DNA of 64,000 bases from Neoechinorhynchus agilis (taxonomy: Eukaryota; Animalia; Acanthocephala): positions 13,122,784-13,186,783 of the forward strand of contig CM121341.1 in NCBI GenBank assembly GCA_051530055.1, given 5' to 3'. Every line of letters begins with the position of its first letter. Position 1 is the first letter of the stretch. The position numbers were made by a program, and so were the translations under genes. Below the pieces are notes generated by a model that ran no database searches, was not told the DNA's origin, and saw only the letters and a program-made list of their open reading frames with translations. Positions 6,134 to 64,000 of the stretch are shown piece by piece.

Positions 6134-7491
6134 ATGGATCACCATCATGATCATCACATGAATCCATCACCGCAACCACTCATGGCTTTGCTAGCCACCT
6201 TTGGCATAAGTCTCTTTCCGTTTCTCATTCTGTTTGCAATGCCGAAAATGGGCATAGATCATGATAGTCCAACACTCCGATATCTTCTACAATTCGCAGC
6301 CGGATCTTTACTCGGTGATGCATTTATCCATCTCATTCCTCATGCTTTATCCGAAGCGTCCGAACATCAAGATTTTGAGAGAATCGGAATGCTCACCTTT
6401 TCCGGGGTACTCATCTTCGCCATTCTGGAGATGGTCGCAAGTCATTTGGTTGATCATAAAAAGGAAAGCTCTAAGTTAAAAAAGGACAAGGATAGCGATG
6501 ATGAAGACTTTAAATCGTGGTTTTGCGTTGTATTTTTGGTTTTAATATCTTTTTTGTCTAATTTTAATAACTTCTTGAAAAACTCTGAAATACACTACCT
6601 TTTTCATCCCTATGTTAACTTTTGAATCATAAAACCTACCTATCATTAAAGGTGCATTTAAAATGAATCTAAATAAACTGCTTTTGATATTCTGATTTCG
6701 TGTAGGGTTTGTCGAAGTGCTTTTATGTTTTGCTTTTCCAAGGTTTGCGATTAGATCCCGTCAAATTAAAATCTGAAAATTACACATTCAACAGTGGAGA
6801 ACCACGGTGTACACCAACGGAACCCGAGGTTCACAAAACCGTAGACGTATCTGGGGTTCACAAAACCGTAGACGTATCTGGATACTTGAGTCTACTTGCT
6901 GATTTTTCGCACAACTTCACAGATGGACTTGCTATGGGCGCTTCATTCATGGTCACTGGTCGATTAGGTAGATTTAAATGTTTTGATAAAACTAACCTAT
7001 AGCTTTTTTAGGTCTGGTAACATCTCTTGCTGTCCTCCTTCACGAGATTCCACACGAATTGGGCGATTACGCACTATTGGTCCGGTCCGGGATTAAGCCA
7101 ATAAACGTAGGGTTTTACGTCCTGGATACCTTTTAGAACTTAACCTGATTAGGCAATCTATCTCCAATTGGTGACGGCGATTGGGGCATTCCTTGGATGC
7201 ATACTCGCTATATTCGCCGGAAATGAAGTTTCGATAAATTTTGTTCTTCCAATCACTGCTGGAGGATTCATTTATTCCAGTGGTTCATCTTATGCACTAG
7301 TCTTATAACTGATCATTGAACCACCGGACTACATTGCGTGTGTCTCAATTTTGGCGGATAAGTCACACTGTCACCAGGGTAAAAAGGTGTCCAGAGGGTT
7401 TCGTCAAGCAGCAACGGAAATGGCATGCTTGATCATGGGAGTGCTTGTTATGTCTTTTATATCTAAACTTGAACACGAGCATGAACATTGA
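6134..7491 (+). CDS. LIV-1/ZIP family zinc transporter (ZIP7/ZIP13-like); exons 6134-6516, 6795-6967, 7012-7106, 7153-7273, 7331-7491 (last intron non-canonical); 5' end may extend upstream
   Basis: [52 protein letters not shown], and AGGFIYIACVS after removing 57 nt; three GT-AG introns keep the frame. Confidence 0.9.
7274..7330 (+). other. Candidate non-canonical hairpin intron, 57 nt (ends can slide by 1-2 nt)
   Basis: Contains in-frame TAA; removal restores GGFIYIA; stem tccagtggttca/tgaaccaccgga (11 of 12 bp); no frame-preserving GT-AG option retains the conserved helix. Confidence 0.8.
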
Positions 7492-7864
7492 GATAACCGA
7501 ATCGTCCTTTTGAGTTAGATGTTTTTCACAACAAAAATGCGGTATTACAAACTCAAACACCCTTATTCAAAGAAACCGCTGAAAATCGTACAAAATGAAT
7601 TGAAATTTACAGCGAGCGAATTCTTACCCGAAAAGAAAATCCAATATTCAAATTTATTTTGGAAAAGTGCAAATTGAATATCGTTTTCGAATAAAACGCA
7701 TAATGATCAAAAACAAAAATTTAGGTTCGTGGATTAACATAATGTAACGGTATTTTGATTTTTTGTAGAAATGATTTTAACCAACCGAAACGCTGACCTG
7801 GATAGCATGCAAAAATAACTGAAGGCAATCCATATCCCATTAGAGTTCCATCAAAAAATTATTT

Positions 7865-10423: not shown

Positions 10424-11035
10424 CTCATTAACGGTAAAAGAAATTTAAGCGACAGTTGTCATAGTACAAAAAGACGTGAAAACTTTTGGCCAGGCGAAAT
10501 AAAGAAAAATGATTGTAGTGTAATTTAACAGGGGATTTCTTCAGAATCGATTGAGTTTTCTCAAGTGACAAGCAATTCTAAAGAAATCCCCCGTAGAGGA
10601 CGAAATATTAAATTAAACTAAAATCATTTTTCTTTGGCCAAAAACAAATCCACTAATGGAAATGCATAAAATAATCAATATTTTACATTTTGTCGTTAAG
10701 GATGACAATTAAAAAAATTATAAAGATTCAGAATGTCCTAAAGGCAGAAAAATATCTTTTTGACATGAATTAATAATCATTCTAGATGATTTAGATGGCA
10801 GCTTCATTAATTTCACGTTAATGTGGTAATCAGCCTAAATAGCAAAAACTTTTCTTCCCATTTTCTCAGATTCTGCTGCAAAGATAAAAATAACGCATTC
10901 GAGGATGTGCGAACTCATTAAATGATAAATTCCGTCAAATAAATCGTTGATCTCTGTAAGCAATCATCAACGATCGATTCGTACGAAAGAATAAATCATT
11001 TGTTATAAAAGAGGATAATTTTAGTAGTTGCTTTA

Positions 11036-14058: not shown

Positions 14059-14793
14059 TTAATTTTCGTACTTACATCTTTTTAATAATTTCTTCCAATG
14101 GTGACTGTTTACGTGGATATTTTTGAAGAGGACCTCGTTGAATTCTCCTAAGTACCGCTCCATTTCGACCATGCCTTCAAATACACAATTTCGAATTCTC
14201 TGTGATTTTGATCGAAATCGGTAAGATCGAATTTTTTGTTTGTGGCGGAAAGTCAGATATCTTTGATAAATGCGGACAAAATTGTGCCTCCGAAATATCA
14301 TTCTTCAAACATAAGATCGAATTGCATTACCAAGAAGGTATTGCTGGACGGATCGAACAAATTTGTTAATATCAACTTAATGTTCATTTGTAAAGAAATA
14401 TTCACGATTGAGCAATTGAGAATTGATGAATTGTTCTCTTGTGAGTTCCTAGAAATGCCTGAAGAACACTTCTCACGCGATACAAGCGCATAGACTTGAA
14501 CGTCAGAACTATTCAGCGTTGTAGTTACTTCTCACAACAGGTGTCTCGAGGCTTTTCTAAATGGGCGCAACTTTGGGTTTCATGAGTCATTGAACAAAGC
14601 GGGATTGTTGAGCCACAAGTTCCTTGTAACCTAAACGGAACGCAATCGCGAACAAAACTAATCTCTCACTTATCATTAGAATGTTAGTTTTTTTAGGGAA
14701 ACTTTTTAAATGGGAGACAACTCGCTTAATGGATGCAACCGAGTTCTGTCGCCTTGCTTCATGCAGAGAAAATGACAGGTAGCAACGAAACAT
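14059..14793 (-). CDS. Possible multi-exon hypothetical gene, interrupted by a TSD-flanked insertion; exon structure not resolved
   Basis: Protein-like frames (LYRVRSVLQAFL; DINKFVRSVQQYLLGNAIRSY..RFRSKSQRIRNCVFEG) separated by stops or intron-sized gaps. Confidence 0.35.
14222..14323. mobile_element. 78-bp family-A insertion (14234-14311) flanked by a 12-bp direct repeat taagatcgaatt
   Basis: Identical 12-mers at 14222-14233 and 14312-14323; the insert shares ttgtt.gtggcgg and ttgataaa...ttgtgcctccgaaatat with the 1776-1888 element. Confidence 0.8.
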
Positions 14794-18916: not shown

Positions 18917-19967
18917 TCATTTGAAATCATCTTTAATTTTAGGGCGGAACAAAACAATATTCATGCTCTGATCATCTTTTGTCGTTTTTATACTCTCTAT
19001 GTGAACTTCAGTACTATTCGAACGTTTCATCCCATCTATGAACGCCTCATCATTAACGTTCCAATCATCGAAATTGCAGAATTCATCTGAGTAATAGAGA
19101 CTGTTTTTTCGTCGGATTCGACGATGTCGCACTCCGCTAAAGGGAATCTCCTCACTTGCGAGTGAATCATTTGACTTTAGCGAAGAACTTCCCAGCTCCA
19201 GCCGACGTTTTACCTGTTCAATCTTCGATCGTTTGGGTGATGGACTTGGTTGCTTTTGAATAATGGCTGATGATTCCACATTTGGACGTTGATGGGCAAC
19301 TCTTTTACCAGTTTTGACTGCTAAACATTGCATTTCTTTAGCCAGAATGTGGTTAACAAAAAGGAATAAGCACTCCACATTCTAGCTATATTGCAAATGG
19401 ATTTTCTTGGCGGCATTTAATGACTCCGTCTATGCACTCATTCTCCTTTTTTTCTTGACGTTCTAGGGTATAATTTCCTATTTTAGGCATCAGCGAATCC
19501 CGATTACTGATCACTGAATCTGGTTTCATTTCAAAAGATTCATCGTCTTCATACGAAGCATCATCTTCTGAAATGTTATATTTCTCCCTACAATGAACCA
19601 TTGCAGCTTCTTCGACGATGGGAGCTATATCCGTCTCATAGCGAGTCATCGCAGACTGAACCATCTCGTAAATTCTGCCCATTATATTCTCATTTCTACA
19701 AAATAGACTAATAGCAATGAACAACCAATAGGCACTTTACCTGCGTAACAACAACCGAAATCCTTCCAATAATACACTTTCGTCAGTATCCTCAGTAACA
19801 TCCTGGTTCAACATTAATCGATCGCATAAGCTAAGCACTTCATCAGCAAGTTCATTGTATAAAGAATCTCGCTTTAATGACGAGCATATTCGGTTGACCA
19901 CCAAGTCTAAAGTTCCATTTGAACAAAGATTACATACAACTTCATGAACGTCTTCTTCAATGTTCAT
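18917..19967 (-). CDS. Hypothetical protein, at least three exons (19967-19740, ~19694-19390, ~19337-18917)
   Basis: Consecutive same-strand ORFs joined by a GT-AG intron near 19739-19695 and a candidate hairpin intron. Confidence 0.6.
19338..19389 (-). other. Candidate non-canonical hairpin intron (~46-52 nt)
   Basis: Sense-strand stem tagctagaatgtgg/ccacattctggcta (14 bp, one G-U) sits exactly at the frame switch and contains the stop codon; a weak GT-AG alternative (19424-19382) exists. Confidence 0.55.
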
Positions 19968-21925: not shown

Positions 21926-21926
21926 C

Positions 21927-24392: not shown

Positions 24393-26109
24393 CCTTAGGT
24401 TAGAGCTTTTGCTTTCTTAGAAAAAAGCATAACTCTATATTTTATTGGATTAAGCGGTATTTCGAAAAAGGAAATCTCGCCACATCAGTCAGTGCATTAG
24501 TGTTTTATGCGTGCCAAGTACGATTGCGAAATATTTCAATAAAATATATTTTATCTGAGATTATGATTCTCACAACTCTAACTAAAATATTTTCGTATAT
24601 TATTTATATCTAAACGGTTCTTGTTCAGTTTTAAAGTCTTAGAAAATCGCAACGTGGATGTTAATATAATTAATTCTAATGTTAAAAAGTATGTAAATGC
24701 GGCATCTGGTCATGATTTGCAATCCTATTTGGAGAAAAAAATGTGGCGTGGAGTAGAGCCGGCTTTAAGTTCACGAATGTTCGTTTGAACCCATTAAAGC
24801 AGTAGAAATGTATCCGACCCTTTGCCGCCACGATTTCTAGTGAAAAAATAGAGCGATCTAGGAACTATTTAAAGAAGATGTTAAAAACGTGAACGGGATA
24901 CCTGCTAACAACAATGATGATCCATTGATTTCGTCCGTTTAAAGAACAATTCGAGATTATTATGAATTTTCTTATTTCTTAAAATGTATTTATTGTAAAC
25001 ATATTTGTAAATCATCAAGAGAAAATCCTTTGGGATGATAGAGTTGGACATGTTGTTAACATAATCCCGAATAAAATATATTTTATTGGATTGAGCGGTA
25101 TTTCGAAAAAGGAAATCTCGCCACATCAGTCAGTGCATTAGTGTTTTATGCGTGCCAAGTACGATTGCGAAATATTTCAATAAAATATATTTTATCTGAG
25201 ATTATGATTCTCACAACTCTAACTAAAATATTTTCGTATATTATTTATATCTAAACGGTTCTTGTTCAGTTTTAAAGTCTTAGAAAATCGCAACGTGGAT
25301 GTTAATATAATTAATTCTAATGTTAAAAAGTATGTAAATGCGGCATCTGGTCATGATTTGCAATCCTATTTGGAGAAAAAAATGTGGCGTAGAGTAGAGC
25401 CGGCTTTAAGTTCACGAATGTTCGTTTGAACCCATTAAAGCAGTAGAAATGTATCCGACCCTTTGCCGCCACGATTTCTAGTGAAAAAATAGAGCGATCT
25501 AGGAACTATTTAAAGAAGATGTTAAAAACGTGAACGGGATACCTGCTTACAACAATGATGATCCATTGATTTCGTCCGTTTAAAGAACAATTCGAGATTA
25601 TTATGAATTTTCTTATTTCTTAAAATGTATTTATTGTAAACATATTTGTAAATCATCAAGAGAAAATCCTTTGGGATGATAGAGTTGGACCTGTTGTTAA
25701 CATAATCCCGAATAAAATATATTTTATTGGATTTAGCGGTATTTCGAAAAAGGAAATCTCGCCACATCAGTCAGTGCTTTAGTGTTTTATGCGTGCCAAG
25801 TACGATTGCGAAATATTTCAATAAAATATATTTTATCTGAGATTATGATTCTCACAACTCAAACTAAAATATTTTGGTATATTATTTATATCAAAACGGT
25901 TCTTGTTCAGTTTTAAAGTCTTAGAAAATCGCAACGTGGATGTTAATATAATTAATTCTAATGTTAAAAAGTATGTAAATGCGGCATCTGGTCATGATTT
26001 GCAATCCTATTTGGGTAAGATTACTAAGCGCTGCTTGGTTGTTCAGTCGCATGTTTTATCTATTGATGATTGTTTGATTGACAATCCGACTGAAAGAGAG
26101 TTTATTGAA

Positions 26110-26148
26110 ACACCTAGCTTTCGCCGTCCAACGGCTTCTTCAGGGTGT
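26110..26148 (-). ncRNA. Minimal type I hammerhead ribozyme (inverted pLTR copy)
   Basis: Reverse complement ACACC-CUGAAGAA-GCCG-UUGGA-CGGC-GAAA-GCUA-GGUGU. Confidence 0.8.
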
Positions 26149-27118
26149 AATCTACAATGCGAGTGAAGTGATTGGAAGTTCACATTAGATTCATGACGGC
26201 AGACAACTCATCCTTCTGGTTAATGAGTGTCCTACCGTCCGACCGATGCCCGCTAGAGTCCTCACGATCCCGGGTCTCTCGGGATATGATCAGCGCTTCC
26301 GCTATCGACAGTTCGACGGGATCCTGCGCTTTGTACATTATGCGCGTGGACAGCTGAACTGTTCCATCCGGGTGGACTCGCGAATAATGTTTCGCCCACG
26401 GTGTCGTCACATACGATTGCGCACTTGGGTTCAACGAGTTTCGTACATGCTCGGCCACTCTTTGGCGAAGTGGCCTTTCTGTTTTTCCCACGTACGTGAC
26501 CAAGTGGCCACGGTCAATCCGACACCGTTCACACCGGATCTCGTAGACCACACTGCTCTGATCGCACATCTTCCAGTCACGATCAATGGCTTGCTGACGC
26601 TCCTCGTCCATCCTCGCACCTGCTGCGTATCTGCACATTAGGCACGACCGAGGGCATTCCTGATGATCCTCATGATGCCTCGTTCTCGTCAGCATCCTCC
26701 GCAGCGTTCTACACCCTCTGTGCACAATACGCACATTCAACCCTGCTTGCCTGAGCAGTACTTTAACTCTCTTCGTGAACATTTCACTCACGTACGGAAT
26801 TCGTAGGATCGGCCTATCGTCCTTTCGTTCCCTCATGGGTCCAGCGTCTCGTCTAATTCTATTTTCCACTTCTCGCTGGAATCCTTCGATCTCCTCTGTC
26901 GAATATCCGTTGTCCGCGAAGATCTTGTTTACTGCTTCCACCGCTCCACGCTTCGCGTCCCACGACGATGAGCAGGTGGTTGCCGATTTATGCATACCAG
27001 CGTATATCGCCGCTTTCATCGCCCAAGGATGGTGAGAATCTCGGTGCATCACAATCGACTTCCTGCATGGCTTTCGATACCAATTGAAGTTGGACACATC
27101 GTCGGATTTGAAGCGGAG

Positions 27119-28612: not shown

Positions 28613-28644
28613 ACTTCCACTCCACTTCACTCGCATTGTAGATT

Positions 28645-28683
28645 ACACCCTGAAGAAGCCGTTGGACGGCGAAAGCTAGGTGT
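28645..28683 (+). ncRNA. Minimal type I hammerhead ribozyme in the 3' pLTR
   Basis: Stem I ACACC/GGTGT, CTGAAGAA, stem II GCCG/CGGC, GAAA, palindromic AGCT mini stem III, UA cleavage site, AATAAA just downstream. Confidence 0.8.
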
Positions 28684-29391
28684 TTCAATAAACTCTCTTT
28701 CAGTCGGATTCTCAATCAAACAATGAGCAATAGATAATCCTATTTGGAGAAAAAAAATGTGGCGTAGAGTAGAACCGGCTTTAAGTTCATGAATGTTCGT
28801 CTGAACCCACTAAAGCAGCAGAAGAGTATCCGACCATTTGCCGCCACGATTTCTGGTGAAAAAATAGAGCGATCTAGGAACTATTTAAAGAAGATGTTCA
28901 AAACGTGAACGGGATACCTGTTAACAACAATGATGATCTATTGATTTCGTCCGTTTAAAGAACAATTCGCGATTATTATGAATTTTCTTATTTCTTAAAA
29001 TGTATTTATTGTAAACATATTTGTAAATCATCAAGAGAAAATCCTTTGGGATGATAGAGTTGGACCTATGGTTAACATAATCCCGAATAAAATATATTTT
29101 ATTGGATTTAGCGGTATTTCGAAAAAGGAAATCTCGCCACATCAGTCAGTGCATTAGTGTTTTATGCGTGCCAAGTACGATTGCGAAATATTTCAATAAA
29201 ATATATTTTATCTGAGATTATGATTCTCACAACTCCAACTAAAATATTTTCGTATATTATTTATATCTAAACGGTTCTTGTTCAGTTTTAAAGTCTTAGA
29301 AAATCGCAACGTGGATGTTAATATAATTAATTCTAATGTTAAAAAGTATGTAAATGCGGCATCTGGTCATGATTTGCAATCCTATTTGGAG

Positions 29392-29490
29392 AAAAAAATG
29401 TGGCGTAGAGTAGAGCCGGCTTTAAGTTCACGAATGTTCGTTTGAACCCACTAAAGCAGTAGAAAAGTATCCGACCCTTTGCCGCCACGA
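29392..29490 (-). ncRNA. Candidate ~100-nt structured small RNA, present once per 641-bp unit (this copy given as example)
   Basis: Nested stems GUGGCG/CGCCAC, GUCGG/CCGGC, GCUUUAG/UUAAAGC, GUUCA/UGAAC, CGAA/UUCG, followed directly by a T7 run; no family recognised. Confidence 0.35.
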
Positions 29491-32400: not shown

Positions 32401-33124
32401 ATAAAATATATTTTATCTGAGATTATGATTCTCACAACTCTAACTAAAATATTTTCGTATATTATTTATATCTAAACGGTTCTTGTTCAGTTTTAAAGTC
32501 TTAGAAAATCGCAACGTGGATGTTAATATAATTAATTCTAATGTTAAAAAGTATGTAAATGCGGCATCTGGTCATGATTTGCAATCCTATTTGGAGAAAA
32601 AAATGTGGCGTCGAGTAGAGCCGGCTTTAAGTTCACGAATGTTCGTTTGAACCCATTAAAGCAGTAGAAATGTATCCGACCCTTTACCGCCACGATTTCT
32701 AGTGAAAAAATAGAGCGATCTAGGAACTATTTAAAGAAGATGTTAAAAACGTGAACGGGATACCTGCTTACAACAATGATGATCCATTGATTTCGTCCGT
32801 TTAAAGAACAATTCGAGATGATTATGAATGTTCTTATTTCTTAAAATGTATTGATTGAAAGTGGAAATCGATTTGACAAATAGGCGATATAGTTTTCGTC
32901 CCAATATATATCCATTATTTCGATATCTATAATAAGTTCCATCTCGAATCTGCATATCCCGAATTTCTCTGCGAACAATCATATTTGTTGATTTCAAATA
33001 AAATGAACAGTTTCATATTTTGGTTATAAATCGTATTTGAATTTTCAGTATTGAAACGTAGGAAAGAATTTCCAGTTGGACAGGTCTATGCCCTCCCCCA
33101 GCGCGTAATTCCCCCCCTTCCACA

Positions 33125-36100
33125 ATGTCCTTCGAATTAAGTGACGAAGAGTTGCTTTCATACGCTGAGGAGATTGAATGTAAGAGAATTGATTTCTCGG
33201 AATTTCCGTTTGAGCCTTATGCTTCACAAAAGCAACTGATACAATCTCTTTATTCCTCCATCGACTCAGGAGAGCTGGCGACATTTGAAAGTCCAACTGG
33301 AACAGGGAAATCCCTTTGTCTCTTATTCGCTTCCCTTAAATGGCTCAAGGCCAAATTGGAGAAAGATCGGGACACAGTGAAGCGTGTTCAGGAATCTATA
33401 ATCCAATGGGATGCTGACGAATCCGATGGCAGCGATGATAATTGGTTAGAGAAGGCGAAAAGGCGTATTGAACGACAAGAATCGTGTCTGAATGAACTTG
33501 ATGACATTGAGGACTTGGTTAACGCCGAAGATGCAGTCTTGGAACGGCAGAAGATTTTCGCTAAAAAATTGGAAGTCGATGCTGAAGATGACGGGGATGT
33601 TAAGCAGGTTAGGAAGATATTTTTCGCATCTCGTACGCATTCTCAGATATCCCAAATTCTCACTGAGCTACACAAGATGCCTTCTTTGTCGTCCATAACT
33701 CGCGTAGTCGTATTGGCTTCGAGGCAATCGTTTTGTATTAATGATCAAATCAAATGCCTCGTTACCAATGGCGCCATCAACGATGCCTGTCTTCGTCTAA
33801 TCGATAAGGAAAAGTGTCCTTACAAATCCACAGATCGATTGCGATCACTAAGTGATGCCATGCTGTTTGAACAATTCAAAACTAAAGACAGTATCTTACA
33901 TAAGGCAGTCCGTTTAAAGGCCTGTGCTTATTATGCCAGCCGAGATGCCCTTCCTTCTGCACATTTGGTTCTTCTTCCTTATAATCTGCTTTTATCTGCA
34001 GAAATGAGGGAGTCTATTGGTATCAAGTTAGACGGTCGTGATTGGTTGCTTCAATCCAAATTTAAGGGGTCTTCTCTCACCTTTTTACGACATAGATTTT
34101 CAGGCTTGTATCTGTTAGGTTTTTTGTATCATGAAGCGAACTATTCAAACAAAGAATTTATCAATTTAGTCAACTCCCTAGGAGTTGTTCCGATTTGCAG
34201 CAGTTGCCTTAAATTTTCTCTTATTTATACTACTTGGGGTTTTAAGGGGCTTTTAAAAGTTAGGTATTAAGTTGTAATGCTTCCTGTAATCTCCCACTTT
34301 TCTGAAATTCAGCTTTTGTTCGATAAAATCGGTGTTAATTTTTGTTTAAGGAATGAATATAATATTAATTAACTGTTCTTAAGAATATTCAACAGAATAC
34401 ATTGATGATTGATTTTTTGCTAGTTCTCTCCGCAGCAACCTGACAGCATAAATCAATCCTGTTTCCTGTAAGCAACTGATCTAGTAATGTAGTTATAATA
34501 GACGAGGCCCATAATTTAACGAAATCGTTGAGGGAAATGTTTAATGTCACTGTGAAACGCGATTCACTAATGCGAGCTATATCGTCCCTCAAAGCCTACG
34601 CTTTAAAGTACGCCAAGACATTCAATGCATTGAGTGTCAGTTCGTTAAAGCAATTAACGATTTGTCTCGTGAGTTTGCTGAACGGAATGAAAATTGCAAA
34701 ACATTCACATGTAAGCTCGGTCAGTGAATTTTTGGAGAACAGTGGTCTATCAAACGCGAACATTGGATCACTTCTTGAATTTTGCAAATCAAACCGATTA
34801 TACCAAAAATTGCGTGGATTCCAGTCGGACGATGGAGTTAACGATTTCTTGAAATCAATTAATTTTCTCACTAAGCTCACGTATTACGCTCATAGTGCAA
34901 ACGCTATACAGTCAGCGTTTTCCTTGAAATTGTCGAGACTAGAAAAACTCCAGAAAAATTCTTTTGTTGAATTGAACAACTTGTAAAATAGTCATTTTAT
35001 TTAAGTTCGCAGTGGAGTGGTTCAAGTGATGTTGAGTTTATCTGAGAAAAGGTGTTCGACAGATTTGTATGTCAATTATTCGAAATGCAAGCAGTTGAAC
35101 GTAGGTTTACGTTTTCAAATTATTATATTAGCATGTAAAGAACTCCTTCGATTTCCATTGACTTTCCGTCGTCGAAGTGAGAAAATCTAAGCTGAGAGAA
35201 TTTTTTCCTAATTCTATCAAAATCGATGTTTTCAAAAATTTCTAATTTACAAGGAAATCACTGATTATATCGTCATCTTCTATTCGTGTGTTAACGAGCG
35301 TTGTGAGTGGTACCGATGATTCAGTTGAAATCGAATTTCGAATTATATCACTGGACGCAGTAGGCGAGATGAAGGACATTGTAAACCTTTGTCATGCAGT
35401 TATATTGGCAGGCGGTACTATGCAACCTTTCGAAGAATTTACTGATTTCATTTTTAAGCGTCTGACGGGTAATAGTCGGAGGATAAAAACGTACTCTTTC
35501 GGTCATGTGATTCCTGATTACCACGTCGCAGTTATTTCGACGGGAAAGTACACCGACGGATCATCGATTGATTTAAGGTTATCAAGTAGATCCATAAATC
35601 CTACTAAGACATATCGGAATTTGTGGAACTCAATAGCGGCTATTTCCGGTTCCGTCCTAGGTGGCTGCGTTGTGTTTTTACCGTCTTATAACTTTCTATG
35701 CGAGTTTCAAAAGCACGTAATTGAATTGAAGAATGTAAAAACACGAACGGCAACATATCTTTTAAAGTGTCGATCGTGTAAATAATCGTTGAATCGAGAA
35801 TACAGAGCGCAGAAAAAACAATGAGTTTATACACTCAAAAAATAAACCAAATAAAATGCGCCATACTAATTGCCGTTGTTAATGGTAAACTGAGTGAAGG
35901 AATCAATTTCTCGGATGAACTTGCGAGATGTGTGATTATGGTCGGAATGCCTTATCCCAATGTGAAAGCACCGGAGTTTGTAGAAGAATTGAATTATATG
36001 AGGAAACTGGGAGACGAATACAGCAGAAGGCATTGTGAGATCGTGTGTTGGAAATCGATCAATCAAGCGATTGGAAGGGCCGTTCGTCATATCAAAGATT

Positions 36101-37187: not shown

Positions 37188-39026
37188 GTGGCAGAGTCAA
37201 TAATGGTTTCGTCTGGTGATGAAAATCAAACAGATATGCAGAAACCTACCACAATAGGAGATGACAACTCGTCACGGATCAACAAGGTTGGAATATCGAT
37301 GAGAATATTGCAGGCCATCATAGGGTTCAGGAGAGCAAATCCGGTTACGTATGGTGTGATCGCTACTGTTTGTTCAGCTCTATTTTTTGCCCTTTCCAAT
37401 CTAAATGCAAAACTCATCAAAAACATGTTGGGTGCTGAAATAGCACTCATTAGGTCCATCTTAATGGTCGTGATTTCCTTTGCTGCCTGCAAACTTAAGA
37501 ACTGGAACTTGTTTGAGCTAAGAACCAAACGGATAAACTTCCTATTATTCCTTAAACTGTGCGCGCTGTGGTTTTCAAAGGTCAGTTCCTACAGCGAATT
37601 GAAACCAGGAAACGAAATTTATTTACCACTTATTTTGAATGGATAAGGAACGCCCTAAACACTCAGCGCTTTCGTTCAACTCGGCTCAATGGTATTATTT
37701 AGATTTTATTTCTTTAATGTTTTATTGGTAAGCCGGTTTAATTGATTCAGATTTAGAACATACCTTCCTCGGCTTTTTTTGGAAAACTAAAAAAGCCGAG
37801 GATGGGATGTCCTTAATCGCTATTAAACAAATTTAATTCATGAACTTTTTAAATTTAATCTCTGATAGCTAAAAACATGAAAGTTATTTCGTTTTGTTTG
37901 GATTTTATCTTTCAAAAAATTGATAAATTCCGATATGTGAGGGGGTACCGGAGTATATGCTTAGGATTATTGTTTAGGTCTTCATCGACGTTTCGAATCT
38001 CTTCGTTGTAAGCATCTCTTATTAACTAACAAACTGATAATGAACCCGACGAGGTTAATAAAAAATTATTTATCGGGTGAAGACCTAAACAATAATATTA
38101 TGGATAACTTCCACTAAAACATCGAGATTTCTTATGTAAATCGGTTGTCTCAATTGATTAATCGCACGCGCACAACTAGAGGCTTCGTGGCAGCTATGGG
38201 ATCGATATCCGTCTTTACCGCCGTTCAATTTATTCCTTTACCAACCATGACTTCTCTTCAATACATGTCGGTCGTCTTTACTATTGTTATGGCCAGAATA
38301 TTTCTTAAAGAGCAACTCCGACTCTTGCACATTCCAATGATTTTGGTATCAATTCTAGGAGTATTGCTCGTTTCAAATCCACAGTGGTTTGTCCCTATGA
38401 AGAACAACGGCACAACTGTTGAAGCAGCCAACTCTACAACGTCCACTTCAGACATAACTATTGGTGTATCTCTCGCACTCACAACTGCATTCGCACAAGC
38501 CAGTGCATTTTGTCTTGTAAGGAAACTGAGCCATGGGCAAAACAGGGTAAAGAACATGGTGCTTATATTCAACTTTGCTCTCATATCTGTGCCGCTTCTG
38601 CTAGCATTTTGCATCATTTATCGATTGGTTAAAAAATCAAAAATTATTGTAAGTTCGAGACTTCACGATTTTTTCACGAATCGAGAATTGTCGAAAATAT
38701 ATGGACCGGATGCCGGGTTTTCCATTTTGGCTGCTTCTTTTGGACTCCTTGCACAAATGGCATGTAACATCGCTTTAAAAACAGTCAACGCCGGATACTT
38801 TTCTTTGGTCCGTGGACTTGAAATTCCCTTCTCGTTCATTTTACAAGTGATTTTCTTTGACCTAAACGATCATTACGTATCCTATATTGGAATTGTTTTA
38901 ATAATTTTGAGTGTTTGGTTCATAAATCTGGATAAAATCTGGAGATCAAGGCAGGCAACGAAACAAGAAGATCAATCAGTGGATTCGGAAGCAGCTTCTA
39001 TAGATGTTTCTAGAATAGCAGAATGA
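37188..39026 (+). CDS. SLC35G/EamA drug-metabolite transporter family protein; exons ~37188-37553 and 38178-39026
   Basis: Two EamA repeats (AEIALIRSIL, L-RGFVAAMG...VFTIVMARIFLKE, LLGVLLVSNP, LVRKL, ALKTVNAGYFSLVRGLEIPFSFILQ). Confidence 0.85.
37554..38177 (+). other. Candidate non-canonical hairpin intron, 624 nt
   Basis: Removal gives NFLLFL|RGFVAAMG; stem tgtgcgcg-c-tgtggtt / aatcgca-cgcgcaca (15 bp, two G-U, one bulge). Confidence 0.75.
37966..38096. mobile_element. Foldback element with 19-bp inverted ends and hammerhead-like relics (family B)
   Basis: attattgtttaggtcttca / tgaagacctaaacaataat; CTGATAAT-GAACC-CGACGA-GGTT and reverse GAAACGTC; relatives at 51903-52072 and ~23830-23886. 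Confidence 0.75.
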
Positions 39027-50900: not shown

Positions 50901-53537
50901 AATTTCCTACATTTATATAGTGTGACCGTTTCGATTCACATCCCATTTTATACTGGGGAAATCAGATTCATTATCGCTAATCGATGATCACTGGAACAAA
51001 ACGATGTCCTCTCCTGAAAATCTACTTAGAAAGTATGAACCTAACTCAATTCTAGATACAATCTATAAATAGTAAACAGGGATCCGGAATATGTTTATTT
51101 CACAGGATTATGTAATAGAACGGCGATTCGAGAGTCGCAAATTTATTGCCAGAATTTACGAACAAAAATTCAAATCAATGAATTTTGAACTGCAGTTTGA
51201 AAATTAAAAACCAAAACGATCAATAATTTCTTTTTTCGTTGGCTCGTTTCGTTTTTAGAATTTCAATATTGATCGGAATTATCGACGATTACTTGCATCT
51301 AAAGGGATCATTCAAAAATGATCAAACTGAATATAGAATTTTTTGAACACTAATAACATAAATGTGGACCGTAGGATAAAGCCACTTTGTTTCTGGTAAA
51401 AAATATTTTCTCCTATGAGATCATGGACTGTTCAATCTGACGCCACGTTCTAATGGCATCCAAAAGGAGTATCTTTACCAACACAATAAGTTTTCTTTTC
51501 ATCATAGGCACTCCGAGCGGGCTGGGGCATTTAGCCGGAATGTAAACAATAGATCTTTAAAAGAGATTAGTCAATTAGAACTCATTATGCACGAAAACTC
51601 TCGCTTTAAATTTTCCTTTGTTTGATTTAAAGGTGGAATATTTTCGGGCATTAGCGCATGTGCTAAGAATTTATTAAAGGAATTAATAAATATTTTAAAA
51701 CGTTATAATTATTCACTTGGATCTTAAACCATGAATTAAAAGCGAAATCTGGTCGAATTTTTTATTTCGTTTCTACAAATATTTGAGTCCCCAATGGTGA
51801 AGAAATTGTCACTTGTGCGAAAAAGTAGAACTCTTCCATTTAGACTTCCAGTCAATTCTCGGTTTATTCGTCAAAAAGGATTTACTCTAAGACGGACTAA
51901 AATATTAGAATTATTGTTTAGAAGTCTTGACCCGATAAATAATTTTTATTAAAGACGTTCTGCGAACCTCGCCGGGTAGTGAGAATTGATGATGAACCCG
52001 ACGAGGTTCGCAGAACGTCTTTAATAAAAAAAATCCTTTGCCAGGTGAAGACTTCTAAACAATAATTCTAATCAAATACCCCAGGACTTCACATATCGAC
52101 AGTTGTATTAAAACATAGACCGTGTAGTATGATTAAGAAAATATTTTTTCATTTGTGAGAAGTGTCTCATCTCTTTTTAAGATTAATAACATTATATTGA
52201 ACCTTACAAGTCACCTATCAATGGTACCCTTTTCAAAAAATCTTTATCGTTCCAAAAATGGTTATTATAATCGTTGCCGTGATTCGGGTTTGATCCTCAG
52301 CGAAGGGCGAGTAAACTGTTAGCGATAAGCATACCGCGAAAGCTTCCTCGTTTACTTGCTGACGAACCTGAACATCGTTTTCTGTAAAGTTGAAGGCAAC
52401 GCTGACATTTCTGCCTTTTTCCCATTTCGATTGATAATAGTACCGACAATTGCAGTGAAGTATTGAAAACACTCATCTTTGCATAGTACGAAACCTATTA
52501 TATGGGTATAAGTAAAAAAACCCGTCACTATTCGTGATCTCTATTTCTGTATTTTTATTTCCTAAGAATGTAAATGAAATATAAAATTGTTAGCTTAAGC
52601 CTTTGAAAATCATATTCATCTATATGAATGCATAAGCCATTTAAACTACAAAAAGGAGCTTGACATCATTATTATAAACTGACTTATACTCACAAATGAG
52701 CGAGTTTTCAATAGATGAAGCATTTTTCGCTTCTTTTCAGAATACATTAGAGAAAAACTTTGCATGGTGTTTCGCAGTACTTAGCGAAACGCATTGTGAA
52801 GTTGCAAATAGTAACGAACAATGCCACTGGCGGATGATTTTCGTCGGTGCTAAGGAGCAAATTAGCAACAGAATTCGCAGGTTTTCCTTGAGACTTTTAC
52901 GCGTTAGCAAATCTACCATCCTTCAATTGAATTCCGCATTCTCACCTCCTACTTTCCGCCTTTAACGGAACAAAAAGCGATCCATTGTCTGAAGTAATGG
53001 AATGTGGTAGTCTGCCTTCTAATGAAACCCGTCTAGGTGTCCCGGAACGAAAACCCGTGAGACTAATAGCACCTACCTCATCGTCATTTTCATTAATAAA
53101 ATCCAAATTTCGATTAGATGGTGCCAGTCGACTATGATTTGACGAATCACTGATGTTGTAGCTTAAAGAACGACGCGCTAAATCCCATCGCATCTTCCAA
53201 TCATTGTCGATCCCTTTTATATTAGGAAAAAGACGTAAATCCACCTGTCAAAACAGCTTTTTGGTTCTCGTTACCTTTTACAATGACAACCAATCCAGCG
53301 ACATATCGTGAGGATTCAATTGAGTCAGGCAGAGGAGTATTTGAGTTGTTGACGTATAAGCTGAAATGCTTAACCTTTTCGAAGTATTTACTCAATGCGA
53401 GTTTAATCCTATCTCTGTATAAGAATATAAATAATTCGGTGAGAAGATAGTTTTTTACCTTAATGGATCATCGGAGGTGGACAGGGTTTCCTGGTATTTC
53501 CGCCCGTTGTACTCAAAAATCACTGAGAATGTCTCCT
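44984..53537 (-). CDS. PLEKHG5-like RhoGEF (RBD-like, DH and PH domains), many exons; the middle exons (48.5-52.9 kb) and the 5' end are only partly resolved
   Basis: QQDAIWELIQTEVSFIRKM (47.9 kb), SFLDLFIQPMQRLTKYKLLLEAILK (47.3 kb), PH-like GILKMKDNKEKIDVYCYLLSDML (45.9 kb), ubiquitin-like FSVIFEYNGRKY...LYVNNSNTPL (53.3-53.5 kb); all resolved introns are GT-AG. Confidence 0.75.
51903..52072. mobile_element. Foldback element (family B), nearly fully palindromic
   Basis: attagaattattgtttagaagtctt / aagacttctaaacaataattctaat plus an inner tttattaaagacgttctgcgaacctcg inverted pair; TTGATGAT-GAACC-CGACGA-GGTTC core. Confidence 0.8.
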
Positions 53538-59281: not shown

Positions 59282-61283
59282 ATGGAAGAGTCCGAAGAAC
59301 AAAACGAAACGGCTTCTTTGCTCAAGGGCATTCTTGAGTCCTGTGATAATACCGATCCCGAATCTCTTGCTAAGCCATTGTTTCTTTTTTTGCTCTTAAA
59401 AGAAGAAACAATGTAGTGAATCACTGATAAGAGAATCCCGATTGACTTCTGAGATGCTTTTGAAATATTTAAAGTTCAATACAAATGAAGTCTCGGATAT
59501 TTTAAAAGCAGCTACATACATCTTAGTCGAAAATCAGTATTTCGAACCGGGCTTGTTTGTCCAAGACCCACCTAAAATGTTTCGACTCGCAAAAAGCTCT
59601 TTAATAGACATGTTCGCCATTTCAAATCTTATCCGAACTTACATTCAATGCGTGTTCCCAAAACTTTCAATTCTAAAGACCACTCTTGAACAGTTCATAT
59701 TTAGTCCAAAATCACTCTGCTTCGCTATCATCGGAATAGTTAGATTTTTCAATAAAAGTTCAATGGAGTATCATCGAATGCGAGCGTTTATCCATCTTCA
59801 GTTACCTCAAATACTGGAATCGTCTATCGAGCTTATTAGTAAATGTTGCGAGGAATTACATATCGATTTGCCTGATATGGACCGCCGATCGGGTTATTTA
59901 CCTTTGTCCGCCATTGCATCCGATCCACGCATTTTGTTCGACAATTATGAAAAAGAAGTTCCGTGGATTTTGGCAGATGACAGTATCGACCAGCAAATGT
60001 ACTGCGACGAAATCGCTGGTACTGTAAATCGATTCTCGACCAAATCACAGTCTGGTTTTATGACGGGATCTGATTACGGATGTTTAGCATTGGCAAGGTT
60101 TTGTCTCGATTCAGGTTTTGATCCAAATTGTGATTCTCATCTCAATTCGTGGATCAATTACATTATAAAGTGGAGGTCAGTTGACGTGGAGATAGTCGGC
60201 GACGACGATGTCGGGAATTGGTCTTCGTGGCTGTCTGGAGCCGTGACCAATATTCATAATTGGTTAACTCGAGAAACGACTCTAGAGGACGCTTATAAAA
60301 TAACCGTTTCCTCACGTCGATTCTCATCGGTCACAATCGTGCTTAATTATCTTGTCGCTGCATCCAAAGTGCGAATGGGTCTTACGAATTCAGGAAAGAT
60401 TGAACGCTTAGACAAGATTGCGAAAAACATAGAAACGGCAATGAAAGAGGATATTGAGTGTCCTCCACATGAAGACTTTGATACGAGGATTTTGTTTGCC
60501 TTTAAAATCATCGAGCAGCACAATTTGACGAATTAGAACGTTATCCATGTGGAACTAATCCTTATCCAGATGGATTGCGCTCGATCAGATTCAGTCATAA
60601 GAAATAAGCTCGAGATTGCTCATTGTACGGAGAGCGAGGATTTACCCAAAATCGGCCATATAATCCCAGCGGCCACTCATCTTGATAGAGATGATTTTCA
60701 GCAACTCCTAGGCTGGATTTTCTCCAGAATTCCACAGAAAAACATGAAACCTACAAGAGCTCGACTATGTTCAATGGCAACGTCACTTACAATGTTAAGA
60801 CCTGAGTACGCGTTTGAAAAGATATATCGGGATTATGTCGAGGTATTAAAATGCAAAAACGAAAAGGAATTAATATCTGGTCCCTATAATCAAACAATAA
60901 TTATCTGTTCGAGATTATCAGCCCTTCTTTCCTCAAGTGATTATCAATTAAAAATTCAAGAGTATTTTCATACTACTGTTGAGAAACTCATAACCGAAGT
61001 TTCTATTATTACCTCGCCGGTTGACGGCTACTTTATATTTCGGATTCAATTCGTGATTAACCTTTCACATCAAATGGTCGAATCGAATATCGGCAATTTC
61101 AAAATACCTTCACGACTTTCCAATATTATTATATCGCTTAACATGGATGGTATTAAAATCGATCGGATACTATGGATCACTGATGACTATAGTAATGTAA
61201 CCGAACATTTACGAAGCAAGCAGTATTTAAATTCAACGAGGTCCGCTATTGCAAAAATATTTGCCGGCAGTGTAAACCAATAA
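59282..61283 (+). CDS. Hypothetical helical protein of ~630 aa; exons ~59282-59374, 59415-60508, 60587-61283
   Basis: ATG at 59282; the two long ORFs are in the same frame and separated by a single TAG inside a hairpin segment; no domain recognised. Confidence 0.65.
59375..59414 (+). other. Intron of ~37-40 nt with a perfect terminal stem (non-canonical or GT-AG reading both possible)
   Basis: cattgtttctt/aagaaacaatg (11 bp perfect) at the frame switch; a GT-AG alternative 59380-59416 also restores the frame. Confidence 0.5.
60509..60586 (+). other. Candidate non-canonical hairpin intron, ~78 nt
   Basis: Contains in-frame TAG 60534-60536; stem atcgagc/gctcgat (7 bp) extending past bulges; the nearest frame-preserving GT-AG option is 108 nt. 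Confidence 0.5.
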
Positions 61284-61339
61284 ATTTGCTTTAGAAATTT
61301 TTTCGACGAAAATATTATCGATTTATAGAGATTATTAAT

Positions 61340-62500: not shown

Positions 62501-63292
62501 AGACCGCTCACAAGATAGACTAGTAATTTGGATATATAAGTTTGACGGTTTAAGTCTGACAAAATGAAGAAATAATTATTTAATTAGATACGTTCGTTTG
62601 CAGATAGAATTGAAGTTCTCAGAATTATGAAACCCTCGTGTATTCATCTCAAAGTTGCCAAAAGGGAAATGCTCGTAATTATTTGGTTTTGCTCTTATAA
62701 ATGTTAAAGTTTTCAAATGAACCTCAATGCTTTGTATATTTAGACCGGGCAAGTAAAACAAAACATTCGTAAAAATCAGTGCAACCTTAAGTAAACGCAC
62801 GATTTTGTTCGTTGACATTATAGATTTAATTTTTTGAAATAAAAACTTGGAAATGCACAAGAAATCTCAAATTAATAAATAGAAAAATGATAGTTCAAAA
62901 CAGATTTAAGTTATTAAGAAATCACTCAGTTTCTCAGCCCAAAATGAACCCGAAACGAAGGTTTTCTTGAATACAAAATCGTTTCCCAGTGCGCTTTTGG
63001 TCTTAGGTAGCGTTAAAGGTAATGATTCATCTCTAACCTTTCCTAAAACACGACGGAATAAATTTGTTCTAAACTAATGCATCCCCTCCTCAAGTCTACA
63101 AAGTCCATCCGTACAACAACGAAAAATGGTCTTATTGTAAATGTCGAGACGATCCGTCTGGATGTCACTCTTACCCTAAAATATGTAAAAGCGACCCTTG
63201 TGGCTTTACATCTAACTAGAATTCGCCACACTATAAAACCACGACATATTCTTTTAAAACTCGTGTAACATTTCTCGAATAGTAGACCAGTA

Positions 63293-64000
63293 ATGTGGAC
63301 TAAAACCCAGTCAACGTCTATCGATGCGAATTCTCCAGAAGAGAAAATCAGATCGGACTACCACACGGACTACAAGATAAGCTCGGAAACCCATGGATCA
63401 TCTTACGGTAGTGATGAGCGGCACAAGTATACGAGTGAGGCGTATGTTGATACTAGACGAAATAACTCCATTGAAAATGGGTCATCCTTGATGGTTTATC
63501 CGCTTGAAAAATACAAGATTCAGCAGGATCCATGTCCGATTGTGATTCGAAAACTGCTTGCGAAAAACGGAACTCATTTGAGACAAAATGTAATCGTACG
63601 ATATTTCCGACCACCAAAATTACCAACACCAGGCCCATTGATCATCCGGGAAATAAGAGCTCCACAGATCCCACCGGCACCGCCTTTGGTCATTCGTCAG
63701 CGGCCCCCAAATCCACCTTCTAATATACAACCACTCATATTACGAGAACGACCTCCATTGCCTCCCAAAGTAGATACTCAAGCAAAGATAATCACTAAGA
63801 AATTGCCGCCATTGCCTCCACCCGCCAGGCAGCTTATTTTACATGCAAATGAGCTCTCTATGTGGGTCTTGAGAACTCATTAGAGTAGAGAGATATCCAC
63901 CGATGCCACCGAAACCACGAGATATCATCATTGAACGTTGGCTGCCTTATCAAGCGGCTCAAAGACGAAAAGTGATTTACCAACGAGCTCATGATTCAGG
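63293..64000 (+). CDS. Proline-rich repeat protein (PPLVIRQRPP/PLILRERPP motifs), runs off the window
   Basis: The ORF continues after a ~46-nt interruption as ERYPPMPPKPRDIIIERWLPY; I associate this motif with rotifer/syndermatan hypothetical proteins (from memory, unverified). Confidence 0.75.
63841..63886 (+). other. Candidate non-canonical hairpin intron, 46 nt
   Basis: Removal gives RQLILERYPP; stem aatgagctctc/gagaactcatt (10 of 11 bp); the only GT-AG option is 22 nt. Confidence 0.6.

What the first reader, a model, noticed from the sequence alone, without database searches (positions are those of the whole stretch)
7274..63886. A class of structure-defined, non-GT-AG introns with base-paired ends across unrelated genes of an animal
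Seen: eight segments in six unrelated genes sit exactly where a frame break or stop must be removed: ZIP 7274-7330, hypothetical 19338-19389, DDX11 34036-34484 and 35740-35780, SLC35G 37554-38177, hypothetical 59375-59414 and 60509-60586, Pro-rich 63841-63886. Each has a 7-15 bp stem joining its ends; the stem usually starts within 1-4 nt of the inferred junctions (5-7 nt in the Pro-rich gene). They share no sequence or terminal dinucleotide and range from 40 to 624 nt. Imperfect pairs are more often G-U (6) than A-C (2) on the sense strand, including the one minus-strand case. The ordinary GT-AG introns I inspected (FoxO, ZIP intron 2) lack such stems, and both types occur in the same gene. 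Known: euglenid nonconventional introns are defined by end pairing; Fritillaria and Amoebophrya have transposon-derived non-canonical introns. Inference: this lineage removes a second intron class recognised by RNA structure, via a modified spliceosome, an endonuclease/ligase route, or possibly DNA-level excision. Homology pins four cases; the rest are weaker and several have GT-AG alternatives.
Basis: partly seen in the sequence, partly recalled or inferred. Interest (0 to 1): 0.95.

Follow-up and report, generated by a model that had tools for sequence, protein, structure and literature searches.

The report
Hairpin-closed non-GT-AG introns, thorny-headed worm
In the thorny-headed worm Neoechinorhynchus agilis, short hairpin-forming inserts that break the reading frames of ordinary genes lack normal intron signals, yet public RNA data show they are cut out of transcripts exactly; this intron type was known mainly from Euglena-like protists, and the published gene annotation of this animal misses it.

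Summary
All eight segments carry terminal stems stronger than 97.5-100% of random same-length placements. Three GT-AG introns in the same window (FoxO, ZIP x2) have none.

New here: RNA evidence. Transcript contigs from three RNA-seq samples skip the 449-nt DDX11 segment and the 624-nt SLC35G segment exactly as predicted. They skip the short DDX11 segment as 47 nt, not 41. They also reveal a fourth, unlisted 361-nt intron (34906-35266) that has a strong terminal stem too. No placement of these four junctions gives GT-AG. About 14x of genomic reads show no copy lacking them, so removal is at RNA level. ZIP is supported indirectly.

Also new: the junctions carry 2-5-nt direct repeats, mostly TA, so the mRNA equals the site without the insert. 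That is the footprint of TA-duplicating inverted-repeat (MITE-like) insertions. The cuts lie about 3-4 nt outside the stem.

The architecture matches euglenid nonconventional introns and Amoebophrya introners. The enzyme is unknown. The NCBI annotation splits four genes here into nine models.

Earlier agents of this scan found the same class elsewhere in this genome, but without transcript evidence.

The parts
7274..7330 (+). 57-nt hairpin intron in the ZIP zinc-transporter gene, T|A...T|A bounded
   Evidence: The in-frame stop is removed. Pfam Zip profile runs 283 -> bridging Tyr codon -> 285 across the junction. Terminal duplex -16.8 kcal/mol, 0.6-1.3% of controls. The four best RNA runs hold 0.72 of 29 sampled words of 7153-7488; 0.716 is expected if the segment and its junction words are absent.
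19338..19389 (-). 52-nt predicted hairpin intron in a hypothetical gene
   Evidence: Joins ORFs 19389-19736 and 18920-19381. Strongest short stem, -23.9 kcal/mol, 0 of 400-500 controls. No RNA or homology evidence. Does not fit T|A...T|A in the required frame.
34037..34485 (+). 449-nt hairpin intron of DDX11, just before the DEAH motif (junction may slide: 34035-34483 to 34037-34485)
   Evidence: RNA contigs of X2, X3 and X4 skip it at depth 14.6-24.2, against at most 4.4 retained. 0 DNA reads carry the joint. Ends are GT..TA, TC..AG or CG..GT, never GT..AG. Pfam DEAD_2 runs 142 (+2 aa) -> 145. Stem 0.5-1% of controls.
34906..35266 (+).
   Evidence: Found from RNA alone: skipped in all three RNA runs (depth 5.6-15.3), with a retained contig 34879-35295 at depth 8-12. 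Joins ORFs in frame. Terminal duplex -18.9 to -20.2 kcal/mol, 0.2% of controls.
35737..35783 (+).
   Evidence: Joint 35735->35783 in run X4 at depth 15.9 against about 8 retained. The main contigs of X2 and X3 retain it. Stem 0.5-0.6% of controls.
37554..38177 (+). 624-nt hairpin intron of the SLC35G/EamA transporter gene, T|A...T|A bounded, with a nested high-copy MITE
   Evidence: Skipped in all three RNA runs at depth 18-26. 0 DNA reads carry the joint. Stem -25.3 kcal/mol, 0 of 400-500 controls. The EamA domain lies in the downstream exon.
37966..38096 (.). MITE nested in the SLC35G intron (19-bp inverted repeats, TA 2 nt outside each arm); a related copy lies at 51904-52072
   Evidence: Inverted repeat scan. 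blastn match to 51910-52008. Genomic read depth about 50-100x against about 14x in the flanks.
59372..59414 (+). 43-nt (or 40-nt, 59375-59414) predicted hairpin intron in a hypothetical gene; 15-17-bp stem with a 4-nt loop
   Evidence: Both lengths restore the frame. Stem 0 of 400-500 controls. No RNA evidence.
60509..60586 (+). 78-nt predicted hairpin intron in the same hypothetical gene
   Evidence: Removes an in-frame stop. Stem 0.6-1.8% of controls. The NCBI model P0001 ends at the stop inside it and a second model starts after it. No junction repeat and no RNA evidence, so this is the weakest junction.
63841..63886 (+). 46-nt predicted hairpin intron between the Pro-rich N-terminal exon and the rest of a calpain gene, T|A...T|A bounded
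   Evidence: Restores the frame. Stem 1.2-2.5% of controls. The NCBI 196-aa model ends at the stop inside it and the Peptidase_C2 model starts 20 nt later.
3258..3306 (-). Ordinary 49-nt GT-AG intron in the forkhead domain of FoxO (control)
   Evidence: Reads CAG|GTAAAT...TTAAG|AAC and joins ...SRQWQ|NSVRHNLSLH. Terminal duplex at the 86th percentile, MFE -0.1.
6968..7011 (+). Ordinary 44-nt GT-AG intron of ZIP (control)
   Evidence: Sequence and Zip profile 202->205. Terminal duplex at the 82nd percentile.
7107..7152 (+). Ordinary 46-nt GT-AG intron of ZIP (control)
   Evidence: Sequence. Terminal duplex at the 22nd percentile.

Best explanation
These are real introns of a second, non-GT-AG class in the acanthocephalan Neoechinorhynchus agilis.

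Origin (inferred): each descends from an insertion with terminal inverted repeats that duplicated a short target, usually TA, inside a coding exon. This is a MITE-like, Tc1/mariner-style footprint.

Removal (shown for four): the pre-mRNA loses the element plus one copy of the duplicated target, so the mRNA equals the uninterrupted site.

Site selection (inferred): the terminal helix brings the two junctions together, and the cuts fall about 3-4 nt outside it on both sides. There is no shared splice-site sequence, and ordinary short GT-AG introns sit in the same genes.

Enzyme (not shown): my single best guess, about 45%, is a Euglena-like route that does not depend on U1/U2AF-type signal recognition. 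It would cut at both helix-proximal sites and then ligate, for example an endonuclease plus an RtcB-type ligase, which would also predict circular excised introns. A permissive U2 spliceosome, as shown in Fritillaria, is nearly as likely at about 40%.
For: RNA: contigs from three samples skip 449, 361 and 624 nt, and one sample skips 47 nt. Every junction can slide by 2-4 nt and no placement gives GT-AG.

DNA: 0 of about 14x WGS reads show any of the four joints, while low-depth RNA contigs retain the segments, as pre-mRNA would.

Unbiased check: the 361-nt intron was found from RNA alone and still has a terminal stem in the best 0.2% of controls.

All ten hairpin segments score at or below the 2.5th percentile. 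The three GT-AG introns lie at the 22nd-86th percentile.

Protein profiles run on without a gap across the junctions: DEAD_2 142+2 -> 145 and Zip 283 -> 285.

Junction direct repeats are TA, GT, TATA, TAA, TA, TA, TA and ATTTA.

A high-copy MITE in the same window shows the same layout of TA, 2-4 nt, then inverted repeat.

ZIP: the RNA runs hold exactly the word share expected if the 57 nt are missing.

The same architecture is published for euglenids (PMC11282704, PMC12501133) and Amoebophrya (PMC7789003).
Against: Only four junctions are read from RNA, from assembled contigs rather than raw reads, and all in one 6-kb stretch.

The 47-nt intron is retained in the main contigs of two of three runs, and the 361-nt intron is retained at roughly a third to over half of the combined depth. 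Removal is therefore not always efficient.

There is no strand-specific (G-U) signature, so the stems could be only a relic of DNA inverted repeats and not the signal.

The introns themselves are single-copy in 70 kb and in read depth, so they are not a recently active MITE family.

Two predicted cases (hyp1, hyp2b) do not fit TA...TA.

Because of the duplicated letters the true cut positions are unknown, so 'U|A at both ends' is a convention and not an observation.

Nothing here tests the enzyme.
Confidence: 0.8

Rival explanations
1. Same introns, but catalysed by the ordinary U2-type spliceosome made permissive, as in the tunicate Fritillaria borealis. The hairpin only brings the ends together or is a relic of the transposon.
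For: Fritillaria is the only animal precedent. There, MITE-derived non-GT-AG introns with TIRs and TSDs need the U2 spliceosome (PMC13326754, PMC11282704). Spliceosomes do remove hairpin-shaped mirtrons (established knowledge). The 449-nt intron has GT at one placement and AG at another. There is no G-U strand bias to show that the RNA helix is under selection.
Against: No shared 5' or 3' splice-site, branch or polypyrimidine signal appears among the four RNA-defined introns. Introns of 35-47 nt are almost fully base-paired. Canonical GT-AG introns with good signals persist in the same genes, unlike Fritillaria, where fewer than 10% are canonical. The Fritillaria end types AG-AC and AG-AT are not seen.
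Confidence: 0.4
2. The segments are cut out of the DNA in somatic nuclei, as with the TA-bounded internal eliminated sequences of Paramecium. On this view the 'spliced' RNA comes from rearranged genes.
For: The segments are TA-bounded, short, lie inside coding sequence and are removed precisely, which is the layout of ciliate IES (established knowledge). The DNA came from whole worms or pools that may be dominated by germline and embryos (PMC12690905).
Against: 0 WGS reads carry any of the four joints at about 14x each, roughly 56 spanning observations, so any excised fraction is below about 5%. RNA contigs retaining each segment exist in the same libraries.
Confidence: 0.05
3. The skips are artefacts: reverse transcriptase jumps across a hairpin between short direct repeats. 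On this view the genes are broken or the inserts are tolerated.
For: Template switching typically yields non-canonical 'junctions' flanked by short direct repeats across stable stems (established knowledge). That description fits these junctions.
Against: The skipped form is the majority for the 449- and 624-nt segments, 15-26 against 1-7. The same junction appears in three samples. Every skip restores a conserved reading frame and protein-profile continuity. Otherwise DDX11, ZIP and SLC35G would all be dead genes, as would PRP8 and DDX41 by earlier unchecked notes of this scan on other windows.
Confidence: 0.03

Closest known systems
Nonconventional introns of euglenids (Euglena gracilis, E. 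agilis)
   Same: No GT-AG ends. The ends are held together by inverted repeats a few nt inside the junctions. Short direct repeats make the junction ambiguous. There is no polypyrimidine tract. Lengths run from dozens to hundreds of nt. They coexist with conventional introns in the same genes, a MITE origin is suspected, and the machinery is unknown (PMC11282704, PMC12501133).
   Different: This is a protist lineage, not an animal. The euglenid CAG/CTG motif at +4..+6 and -8..-6 is seen in only 2-3 of 10 cases here. Here the duplicated letters are mostly TA. Circular excised introns, shown in Euglena, are untested here.
Non-canonical introns / introner elements of the dinoflagellate Amoebophrya
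   Same: 8-20-nt inverted repeats pair the two intron ends, 3-5-nt direct repeats overlap the exon-intron borders, and the terminal dinucleotides vary (PMC7789003).
   Different: The Amoebophrya elements form repeated families and U1 snRNA is missing. Here the introns are single-copy in the DNA examined, and canonical introns with good 5' signals persist.
MITE-derived non-canonical introns of the tunicate Fritillaria borealis
   Same: An animal, with TIR and TSD footprints and non-GT-AG ends at species-specific positions (PMC11282704, PMC13326754).
   Different: In Fritillaria more than 90% of introns are non-canonical with preferred AG-AC and AG-AT ends, and U2-spliceosome dependence is shown. 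Here both classes coexist, those end types are absent, and the enzyme is untested.
TA-bounded internal eliminated sequences of Paramecium
   Same: Short, TA-bounded, Tc1/mariner-like inserts inside coding sequence that are removed precisely, leaving one TA (established knowledge).
   Different: Those are removed from DNA. Here the genomic reads keep them and the RNA loses them.

Membership tests
U2-type GT-AG (GC-AG) spliceosomal introns | GT or GC at the 5' end together with AG at the 3' end | tested here: not met
   For all four RNA-defined junctions, no placement within the allowed slide gives GT/GC plus AG (sequences).
U2-type GT-AG (GC-AG) spliceosomal introns | Lariat formation at a branch point | not testable with these tools
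U12-type AT-AC introns | Conserved /ATATCCTT or /GTATCCTT 5' site | tested here: not met
   The intron starts read directly are ATTCCA, GTCGTG/CGTGAT, TATACA/ATACAG, TAAAAA/AAAAAC and TAAACT/AAACTG.
Euglenid nonconventional introns | Non-GT-AG ends with pairing of the two intron ends a few nt inside the junctions | tested here: met
   Terminal duplex at or below the 2.5th percentile in 10 of 10. The stem starts 3-5 nt from the cut in the four RNA-defined cases.
Euglenid nonconventional introns | Short direct repeats at the junctions | tested here: met
   Slides of 2, 4, 3 and 2 nt in the RNA-defined junctions. 8 of 10 have 2 nt or more.
Euglenid nonconventional introns | CAG at +4..+6 and CTG at -8..-6 | tested here: inconclusive
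   CAGT/ACTG opens the stem in the 361-nt intron and CAGTGG in the ZIP intron. The others differ.
Euglenid nonconventional introns | Excised as a full-length circle; spliceosome-independent | not testable with these tools
   Needs raw reads searched for end-to-end joined intron sequence.
Amoebophrya-type introner elements | Inverted repeats of 8-20 nt plus direct repeats of 3-5 nt at the borders | tested here: met
   Stems of 9-21 pairs and direct repeats of 2-5 nt.
Amoebophrya-type introner elements | Many near-identical copies (a repeated family) | tested here: not met
   No second copy of any intron in 70.5 kb except the nested MITE. Genomic depth over the 449-nt intron equals that of the flanks. 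Only this window was searched.
Fritillaria-type non-canonical introns | Preferred AG-AC / AG-AT ends | tested here: not met
   The ends are GT..TA, TA..AT, TA..AA and TA..AC at the leftmost placement.
Fritillaria-type non-canonical introns | Removal depends on the U2 spliceosome | not testable with these tools
   Needs an inhibitor or depletion experiment.
Bulge-helix-bulge introns cut by tRNA-splicing endonuclease | An outer helix formed by the exon flanks, with staggered 3-nt bulges around a 4-bp helix | tested here: not met
   Exon-flank pairing is no better than in split coding sequence (mean -1.05 against -1.04 kcal/mol, P=0.48). The two cuts lie opposite each other, not staggered.
IRE1-type introns (HAC1/XBP1) | Each junction lies in the 7-nt loop of its own small stem-loop (CNG|CNGN) | tested here: not met
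   Both junctions sit at the base of one shared stem, and the junction letters are mostly T|A.
Ciliate-type IES (DNA elimination) | The segment is absent from the DNA of expressing nuclei | tested here: not met
   0 WGS reads with the joints at about 14x, and retained RNA contigs are present.
Tc1/mariner-type MITE | TA target-site duplication flanking terminal inverted repeats | tested here: met
   7 of 10 can be written T|A...T|A, and all have inverted repeats.
Tc1/mariner-type MITE | Multiple dispersed copies | tested here: not met
   As above. Only the element nested at 37966-38096 is multi-copy.
Mirtrons | Hairpin intron with canonical GT-AG ends | tested here: not met
   Non-GT-AG ends. 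No Rfam family matched in the window.

The most novel reading that the evidence does not exclude
An animal has a structure-guided mRNA splicing pathway that does not use the spliceosome. An endonuclease would cut both strands of the loop at the base of a terminal helix, and a ligase (RtcB-like) would join the exons and circularise the intron. That is the same unsolved chemistry as euglenid nonconventional introns, and it would let TA-duplicating hairpin transposons settle harmlessly in coding exons.
Probability: 0.4. Interest if true: 0.95.

Novelty: new variant of a known kind. Interest (0 to 1): 0.85.

Why it matters
1. Hairpin-bounded non-GT-AG introns with junction repeats were known from euglenids, Amoebophrya and, in a spliceosomal form, one tunicate. 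Finding them with transcript support in a protostome animal shows the solution arose again. It also gives an animal in which to work out the unsolved excision mechanism.

2. It is a clear case of introns born from transposon-like insertions, with the mRNA restored to the empty-site sequence.

3. There is a practical consequence. The public annotation (GCA_051530055.1) cannot model these introns. In this window it splits DDX11 into three genes, and SLC35G, a hypothetical gene and a calpain into two each. The genome paper reports only 47% complete metazoan BUSCOs and never mentions introns (PMC12690905). A second paper reads missing BUSCO genes in this species as gene loss (PMC12256650). Part of that 'loss' may be unmodelled introns.

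Tried and rejected
- Protein-database route to transcript junctions. Searches with the 364-aa middle exon of the hypothetical gene and with DDX11 exon 1 returned only NCBI genome models of N. agilis, with no transcript-derived proteins. The junctions at 59.4 kb, 60.5 kb, 63.8 kb and 19.3 kb therefore stay predictions.
- Exact look-up of a guessed single-exon DDX11 model: not on record.
- Rotaria (bdelloid) DDX11 locus, to date the intron position: uninformative. It has many small exons and an assembly gap where the DEAH exon should be.
- Generic scans. Inverted repeats of 10 bp or more are in excess (182 against about 73 in shuffles), but much of this is a satellite and other repeats. TA-bounded stems of 8-9 bp or more are near the shuffle level, and they do not rescue frames more often than random TA pairs (7/528 against 97/3168). 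TA near generic stems is at chance, 0.10 against 0.10, rising to 5/22 only for stems of 12 bp or more. The class cannot be found by stems alone.
- G-U strand bias: not significant.
- Exon-exon helix (BHB-like): absent.
- Known RNA families, ribozymes and tRNAs: none in the window.
- Literature. No paper in the library reports such introns in Acanthocephala, Seisonidea or rotifers. The original Fritillaria paper is not held.
Full report
IDENTITY OF THE DNA. A protein search with the 364-aa middle exon at 59415-60506 returned one hit, 'hypothetical protein ACOME3_003082 [Neoechinorhynchus agilis]', at 99% identity. Its gene lies on chromosome CM121341.1 of GCA_051530055.1. The window is therefore from the acanthocephalan N. 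agilis, as earlier notes of this scan said.

THE OBSERVATION. I read all eight segments. Removing each one joins two long open frames that are otherwise separated by a stop or a frameshift.

I took the duplex energy between the first and last 28 nt or fewer of each segment. I compared it with 400-500 random placements of the same length in the same DNA, leaving the satellite out. All eight fall in the best 0-2.5%.

Three ordinary GT-AG introns that I defined from sequence and protein profiles lie at the 86th, 82nd and 22nd percentile: FoxO 3258-3306 minus, ZIP 6968-7011 and ZIP 7107-7152. They fold with -0.1 to -6.6 kcal/mol. The short hairpin segments fold with -10 to -26 kcal/mol.

TRANSCRIPT EVIDENCE. 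I laid 32401-38400 against three RNA-seq runs (different samples of one study, held as assembled contigs) and one WGS run held as raw reads.
- The RNA contigs skip 34035-34483 (449 nt, slide +2) in all three runs at depth 14.6-24.2. A retained contig reaches only 4.4.
- They skip 37553-38176 (624 nt, slide +2) in all three runs at depth 18-26.
- They skip 35736-35782 (47 nt, slide +3) in run X4 at depth 15.9, against about 8 retained. The main contigs of X2 and X3 keep this segment.
- They skip 34905-35265 (361 nt, slide +4) in all three runs at depth 5.6-15.3, with a retained contig at depth 8-12.

The last intron was not in the finding. It was found from RNA alone, yet its ends pair with -19 to -20 kcal/mol, in the best 0.2% of controls. 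That makes it an unbiased confirmation of the link between this intron type and end pairing.

Between 32987 and 36264 the DDX11 transcript has no GT-AG intron at all. Within the allowed slides none of the four junctions can be written GT...AG.

The WGS run covers the region at about 14x and shows zero reads with any of the four joints. The segments are therefore present in the DNA of that sample and missing from most RNA.

Protein profiles agree. DEAD_2 runs from position 142 (two residues before the exon end) to 145 across the 449-nt intron. Zip runs 283 -> bridging Tyr codon -> 285 across the ZIP segment.

For ZIP I had no read-laying run left. The four best RNA runs each hold 0.72 of the 29 sampled words of 7153-7488. 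The share expected if the 57 nt and all words touching its junctions are absent is 0.716. This is indirect and gives no junction.

The junctions carry short direct repeats: TA (ZIP), GT, TATA, TAA, TA (SLC35G), TA (59.4 kb), TA (63.8 kb), and ATTTA in a further 35-nt case in the calpain gene just beyond the window (L001 15768-15802).
- Seven of ten can be written T|A...T|A, so the mRNA equals the site with one copy of the repeat.
- In the four RNA-defined introns the outermost strong base pair lies 3-5 nt from the cut on each side. With the T|A placement the unpaired spacers are 3+4, 3+3, 4+4 and 4+3 nt.
- A multi-copy MITE in the window (37966-38096, related to 51904-52072) has the same layout of TA, a few nt, then inverted repeat. 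Its genomic depth is 50-100x against 14x in the flanks.

This is the footprint of insertions that duplicate TA and carry terminal inverted repeats. The introns themselves, however, have no second copy in 70.5 kb and have single-copy read depth. They are not a recently active family.

CLAIMS THAT DO NOT HOLD.
- G-U pairs number 11 on the sense strand and 9 on the antisense strand, and the sense stem is the more stable one in only 6 of 10. There is no strand-specific sign that the helix is selected as RNA.
- The exon flanks do not pair beyond chance (mean -1.05 against -1.04 kcal/mol). This removes a bulge-helix-bulge reading.
- Stems alone do not identify the class. Generic TA-bounded stems are near shuffle level and do not rescue frames more often than random pairs.

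MECHANISM. Shown: RNA-level removal of four non-GT-AG, stem-closed segments with junction repeats, and coexistence with canonical short introns.

Inferred: a transposon-like origin; the helix as the ruler that sets the cuts; and that the five segments without RNA (19338-19389, ZIP, 59.4 kb, 60.5 kb, 63.8 kb) behave the same way.

Not shown: the enzyme. Against ordinary signal recognition stand three points. There is no shared end, branch or pyrimidine motif. Some introns are 35-47 nt long and almost fully paired. Well-formed GT-AG introns persist beside them.

For the spliceosome stands the only animal precedent, Fritillaria (PMC13326754), and the fact that spliceosomes remove hairpin mirtrons. 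I put about 45% on a non-spliceosomal cut-and-ligate route of the euglenid kind and about 40% on a permissive spliceosome.

I put about 5% on somatic DNA excision and about 3% on reverse-transcriptase template switching. The last is countered by the majority depth of the skipped form, by three samples agreeing, and by exact frame and profile restoration.

COMPARISON WITH KNOWN SYSTEMS. The architecture is that of euglenid nonconventional introns. Those have pyrimidine|purine junctions, end pairing starting near +4, TSD-like repeats, no pyrimidine tract, variable length and unknown machinery (PMC11282704, PMC12501133). It also matches Amoebophrya introners, which have 8-20-nt inverted repeats and 3-5-nt direct repeats across the borders (PMC7789003).

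It differs from Fritillaria in end types and in the coexistence of both classes. It differs from ciliate IES in acting on RNA.

I found no paper in the held library that reports such introns in acanthocephalans, Seison or rotifers. The N. agilis genome paper does not use the word intron.

ANNOTATION. NCBI models in this window break at the hairpins.
- DDX11 becomes 340 + 290 + 147 aa.
- SLC35G becomes 147 + 301 aa.
- The hypothetical gene becomes 287 + 237 aa.
- The Pro-rich exon (196 aa) is cut from the calpain (614 aa).

EARLIER WORK OF THIS SCAN. Earlier agents described the same class in other windows of this genome (PRP8, DDX41, DDX5-like, MUS81), but stated that transcript removal was inferred and not shown. 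The transcript and genomic-read evidence is what this report adds.

Noticed in passing
L001 15768-15802 (about 1.4 kb beyond the window end; window-equivalent 65415-65449): A 35-nt, almost fully paired hairpin interrupts the calpain catalytic domain. It is flanked by a 5-nt direct repeat ATTTA. Removing it gives ...HVEVYLDDLVPC..., and Peptidase_C2 profile positions about 106 and 108 meet there. A 29-nt TA-to-TA alternative would add two residues.
   Followed up: partly
window 24400-32450: Tandem satellite with a period of about 641 nt, seen from the spacing of its inverted-repeat hits. Genomic read depth at its edge (32401-32800) is 40-60x per strand against about 7x elsewhere. It encloses a 2.4-kb inverted duplication at 26183-28609 with arms of at least 290 bp and a 546-aa ORF, probably a transposon remnant.
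   Followed up: no
window 36695-36728 and 38023-38096: Boundaries of high-copy repeats. About 780 and 80-190 genomic reads run off into unrelated sequence here, and RNA contigs do the same, so the MITE family is transcribed from many loci.
   Followed up: partly
window 35728 and 35748: Two common SNPs sit beside and inside the 47-nt DDX11 intron (G>A, and C>A in the inner stem). The non-reference alleles are the majority in the WGS run. The intron is retained in the main contigs of two RNA runs, so splicing might be allele-dependent.
   Followed up: no
window 1776-1888, 2247-2384, 5317-5386, 10531-10591: Further hairpins with perfect stems of 11-26 bp. Three have TA 2-5 nt outside both arms, for example TA-aca-[11 bp]...[11 bp]-cg-TA at 10531-10591. 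They lie outside the long ORFs, in UTRs or intergenic DNA, so the same kind of element is not confined to coding exons.
   Followed up: no
window 14222-14324: A 12-nt direct repeat (TAAGATCGAATT) flanks about 79 nt. I saw the repeat but no convincing terminal stem.
   Followed up: no
window 549-1234: Nested long inverted repeats (arms of 36-56 bp) of a composite repeat, noted earlier in the scan as inverted insertions in SINE copies.
   Followed up: no
L003 (Rotaria sp. Silwood1, CAJNZB010000031.1): The bdelloid DDX11 homologue is also annotated as two genes (286 aa DEAD_2 and 295 aa Helicase_C_2). There the cause looks like an assembly gap, not hairpin introns.
   Followed up: partly
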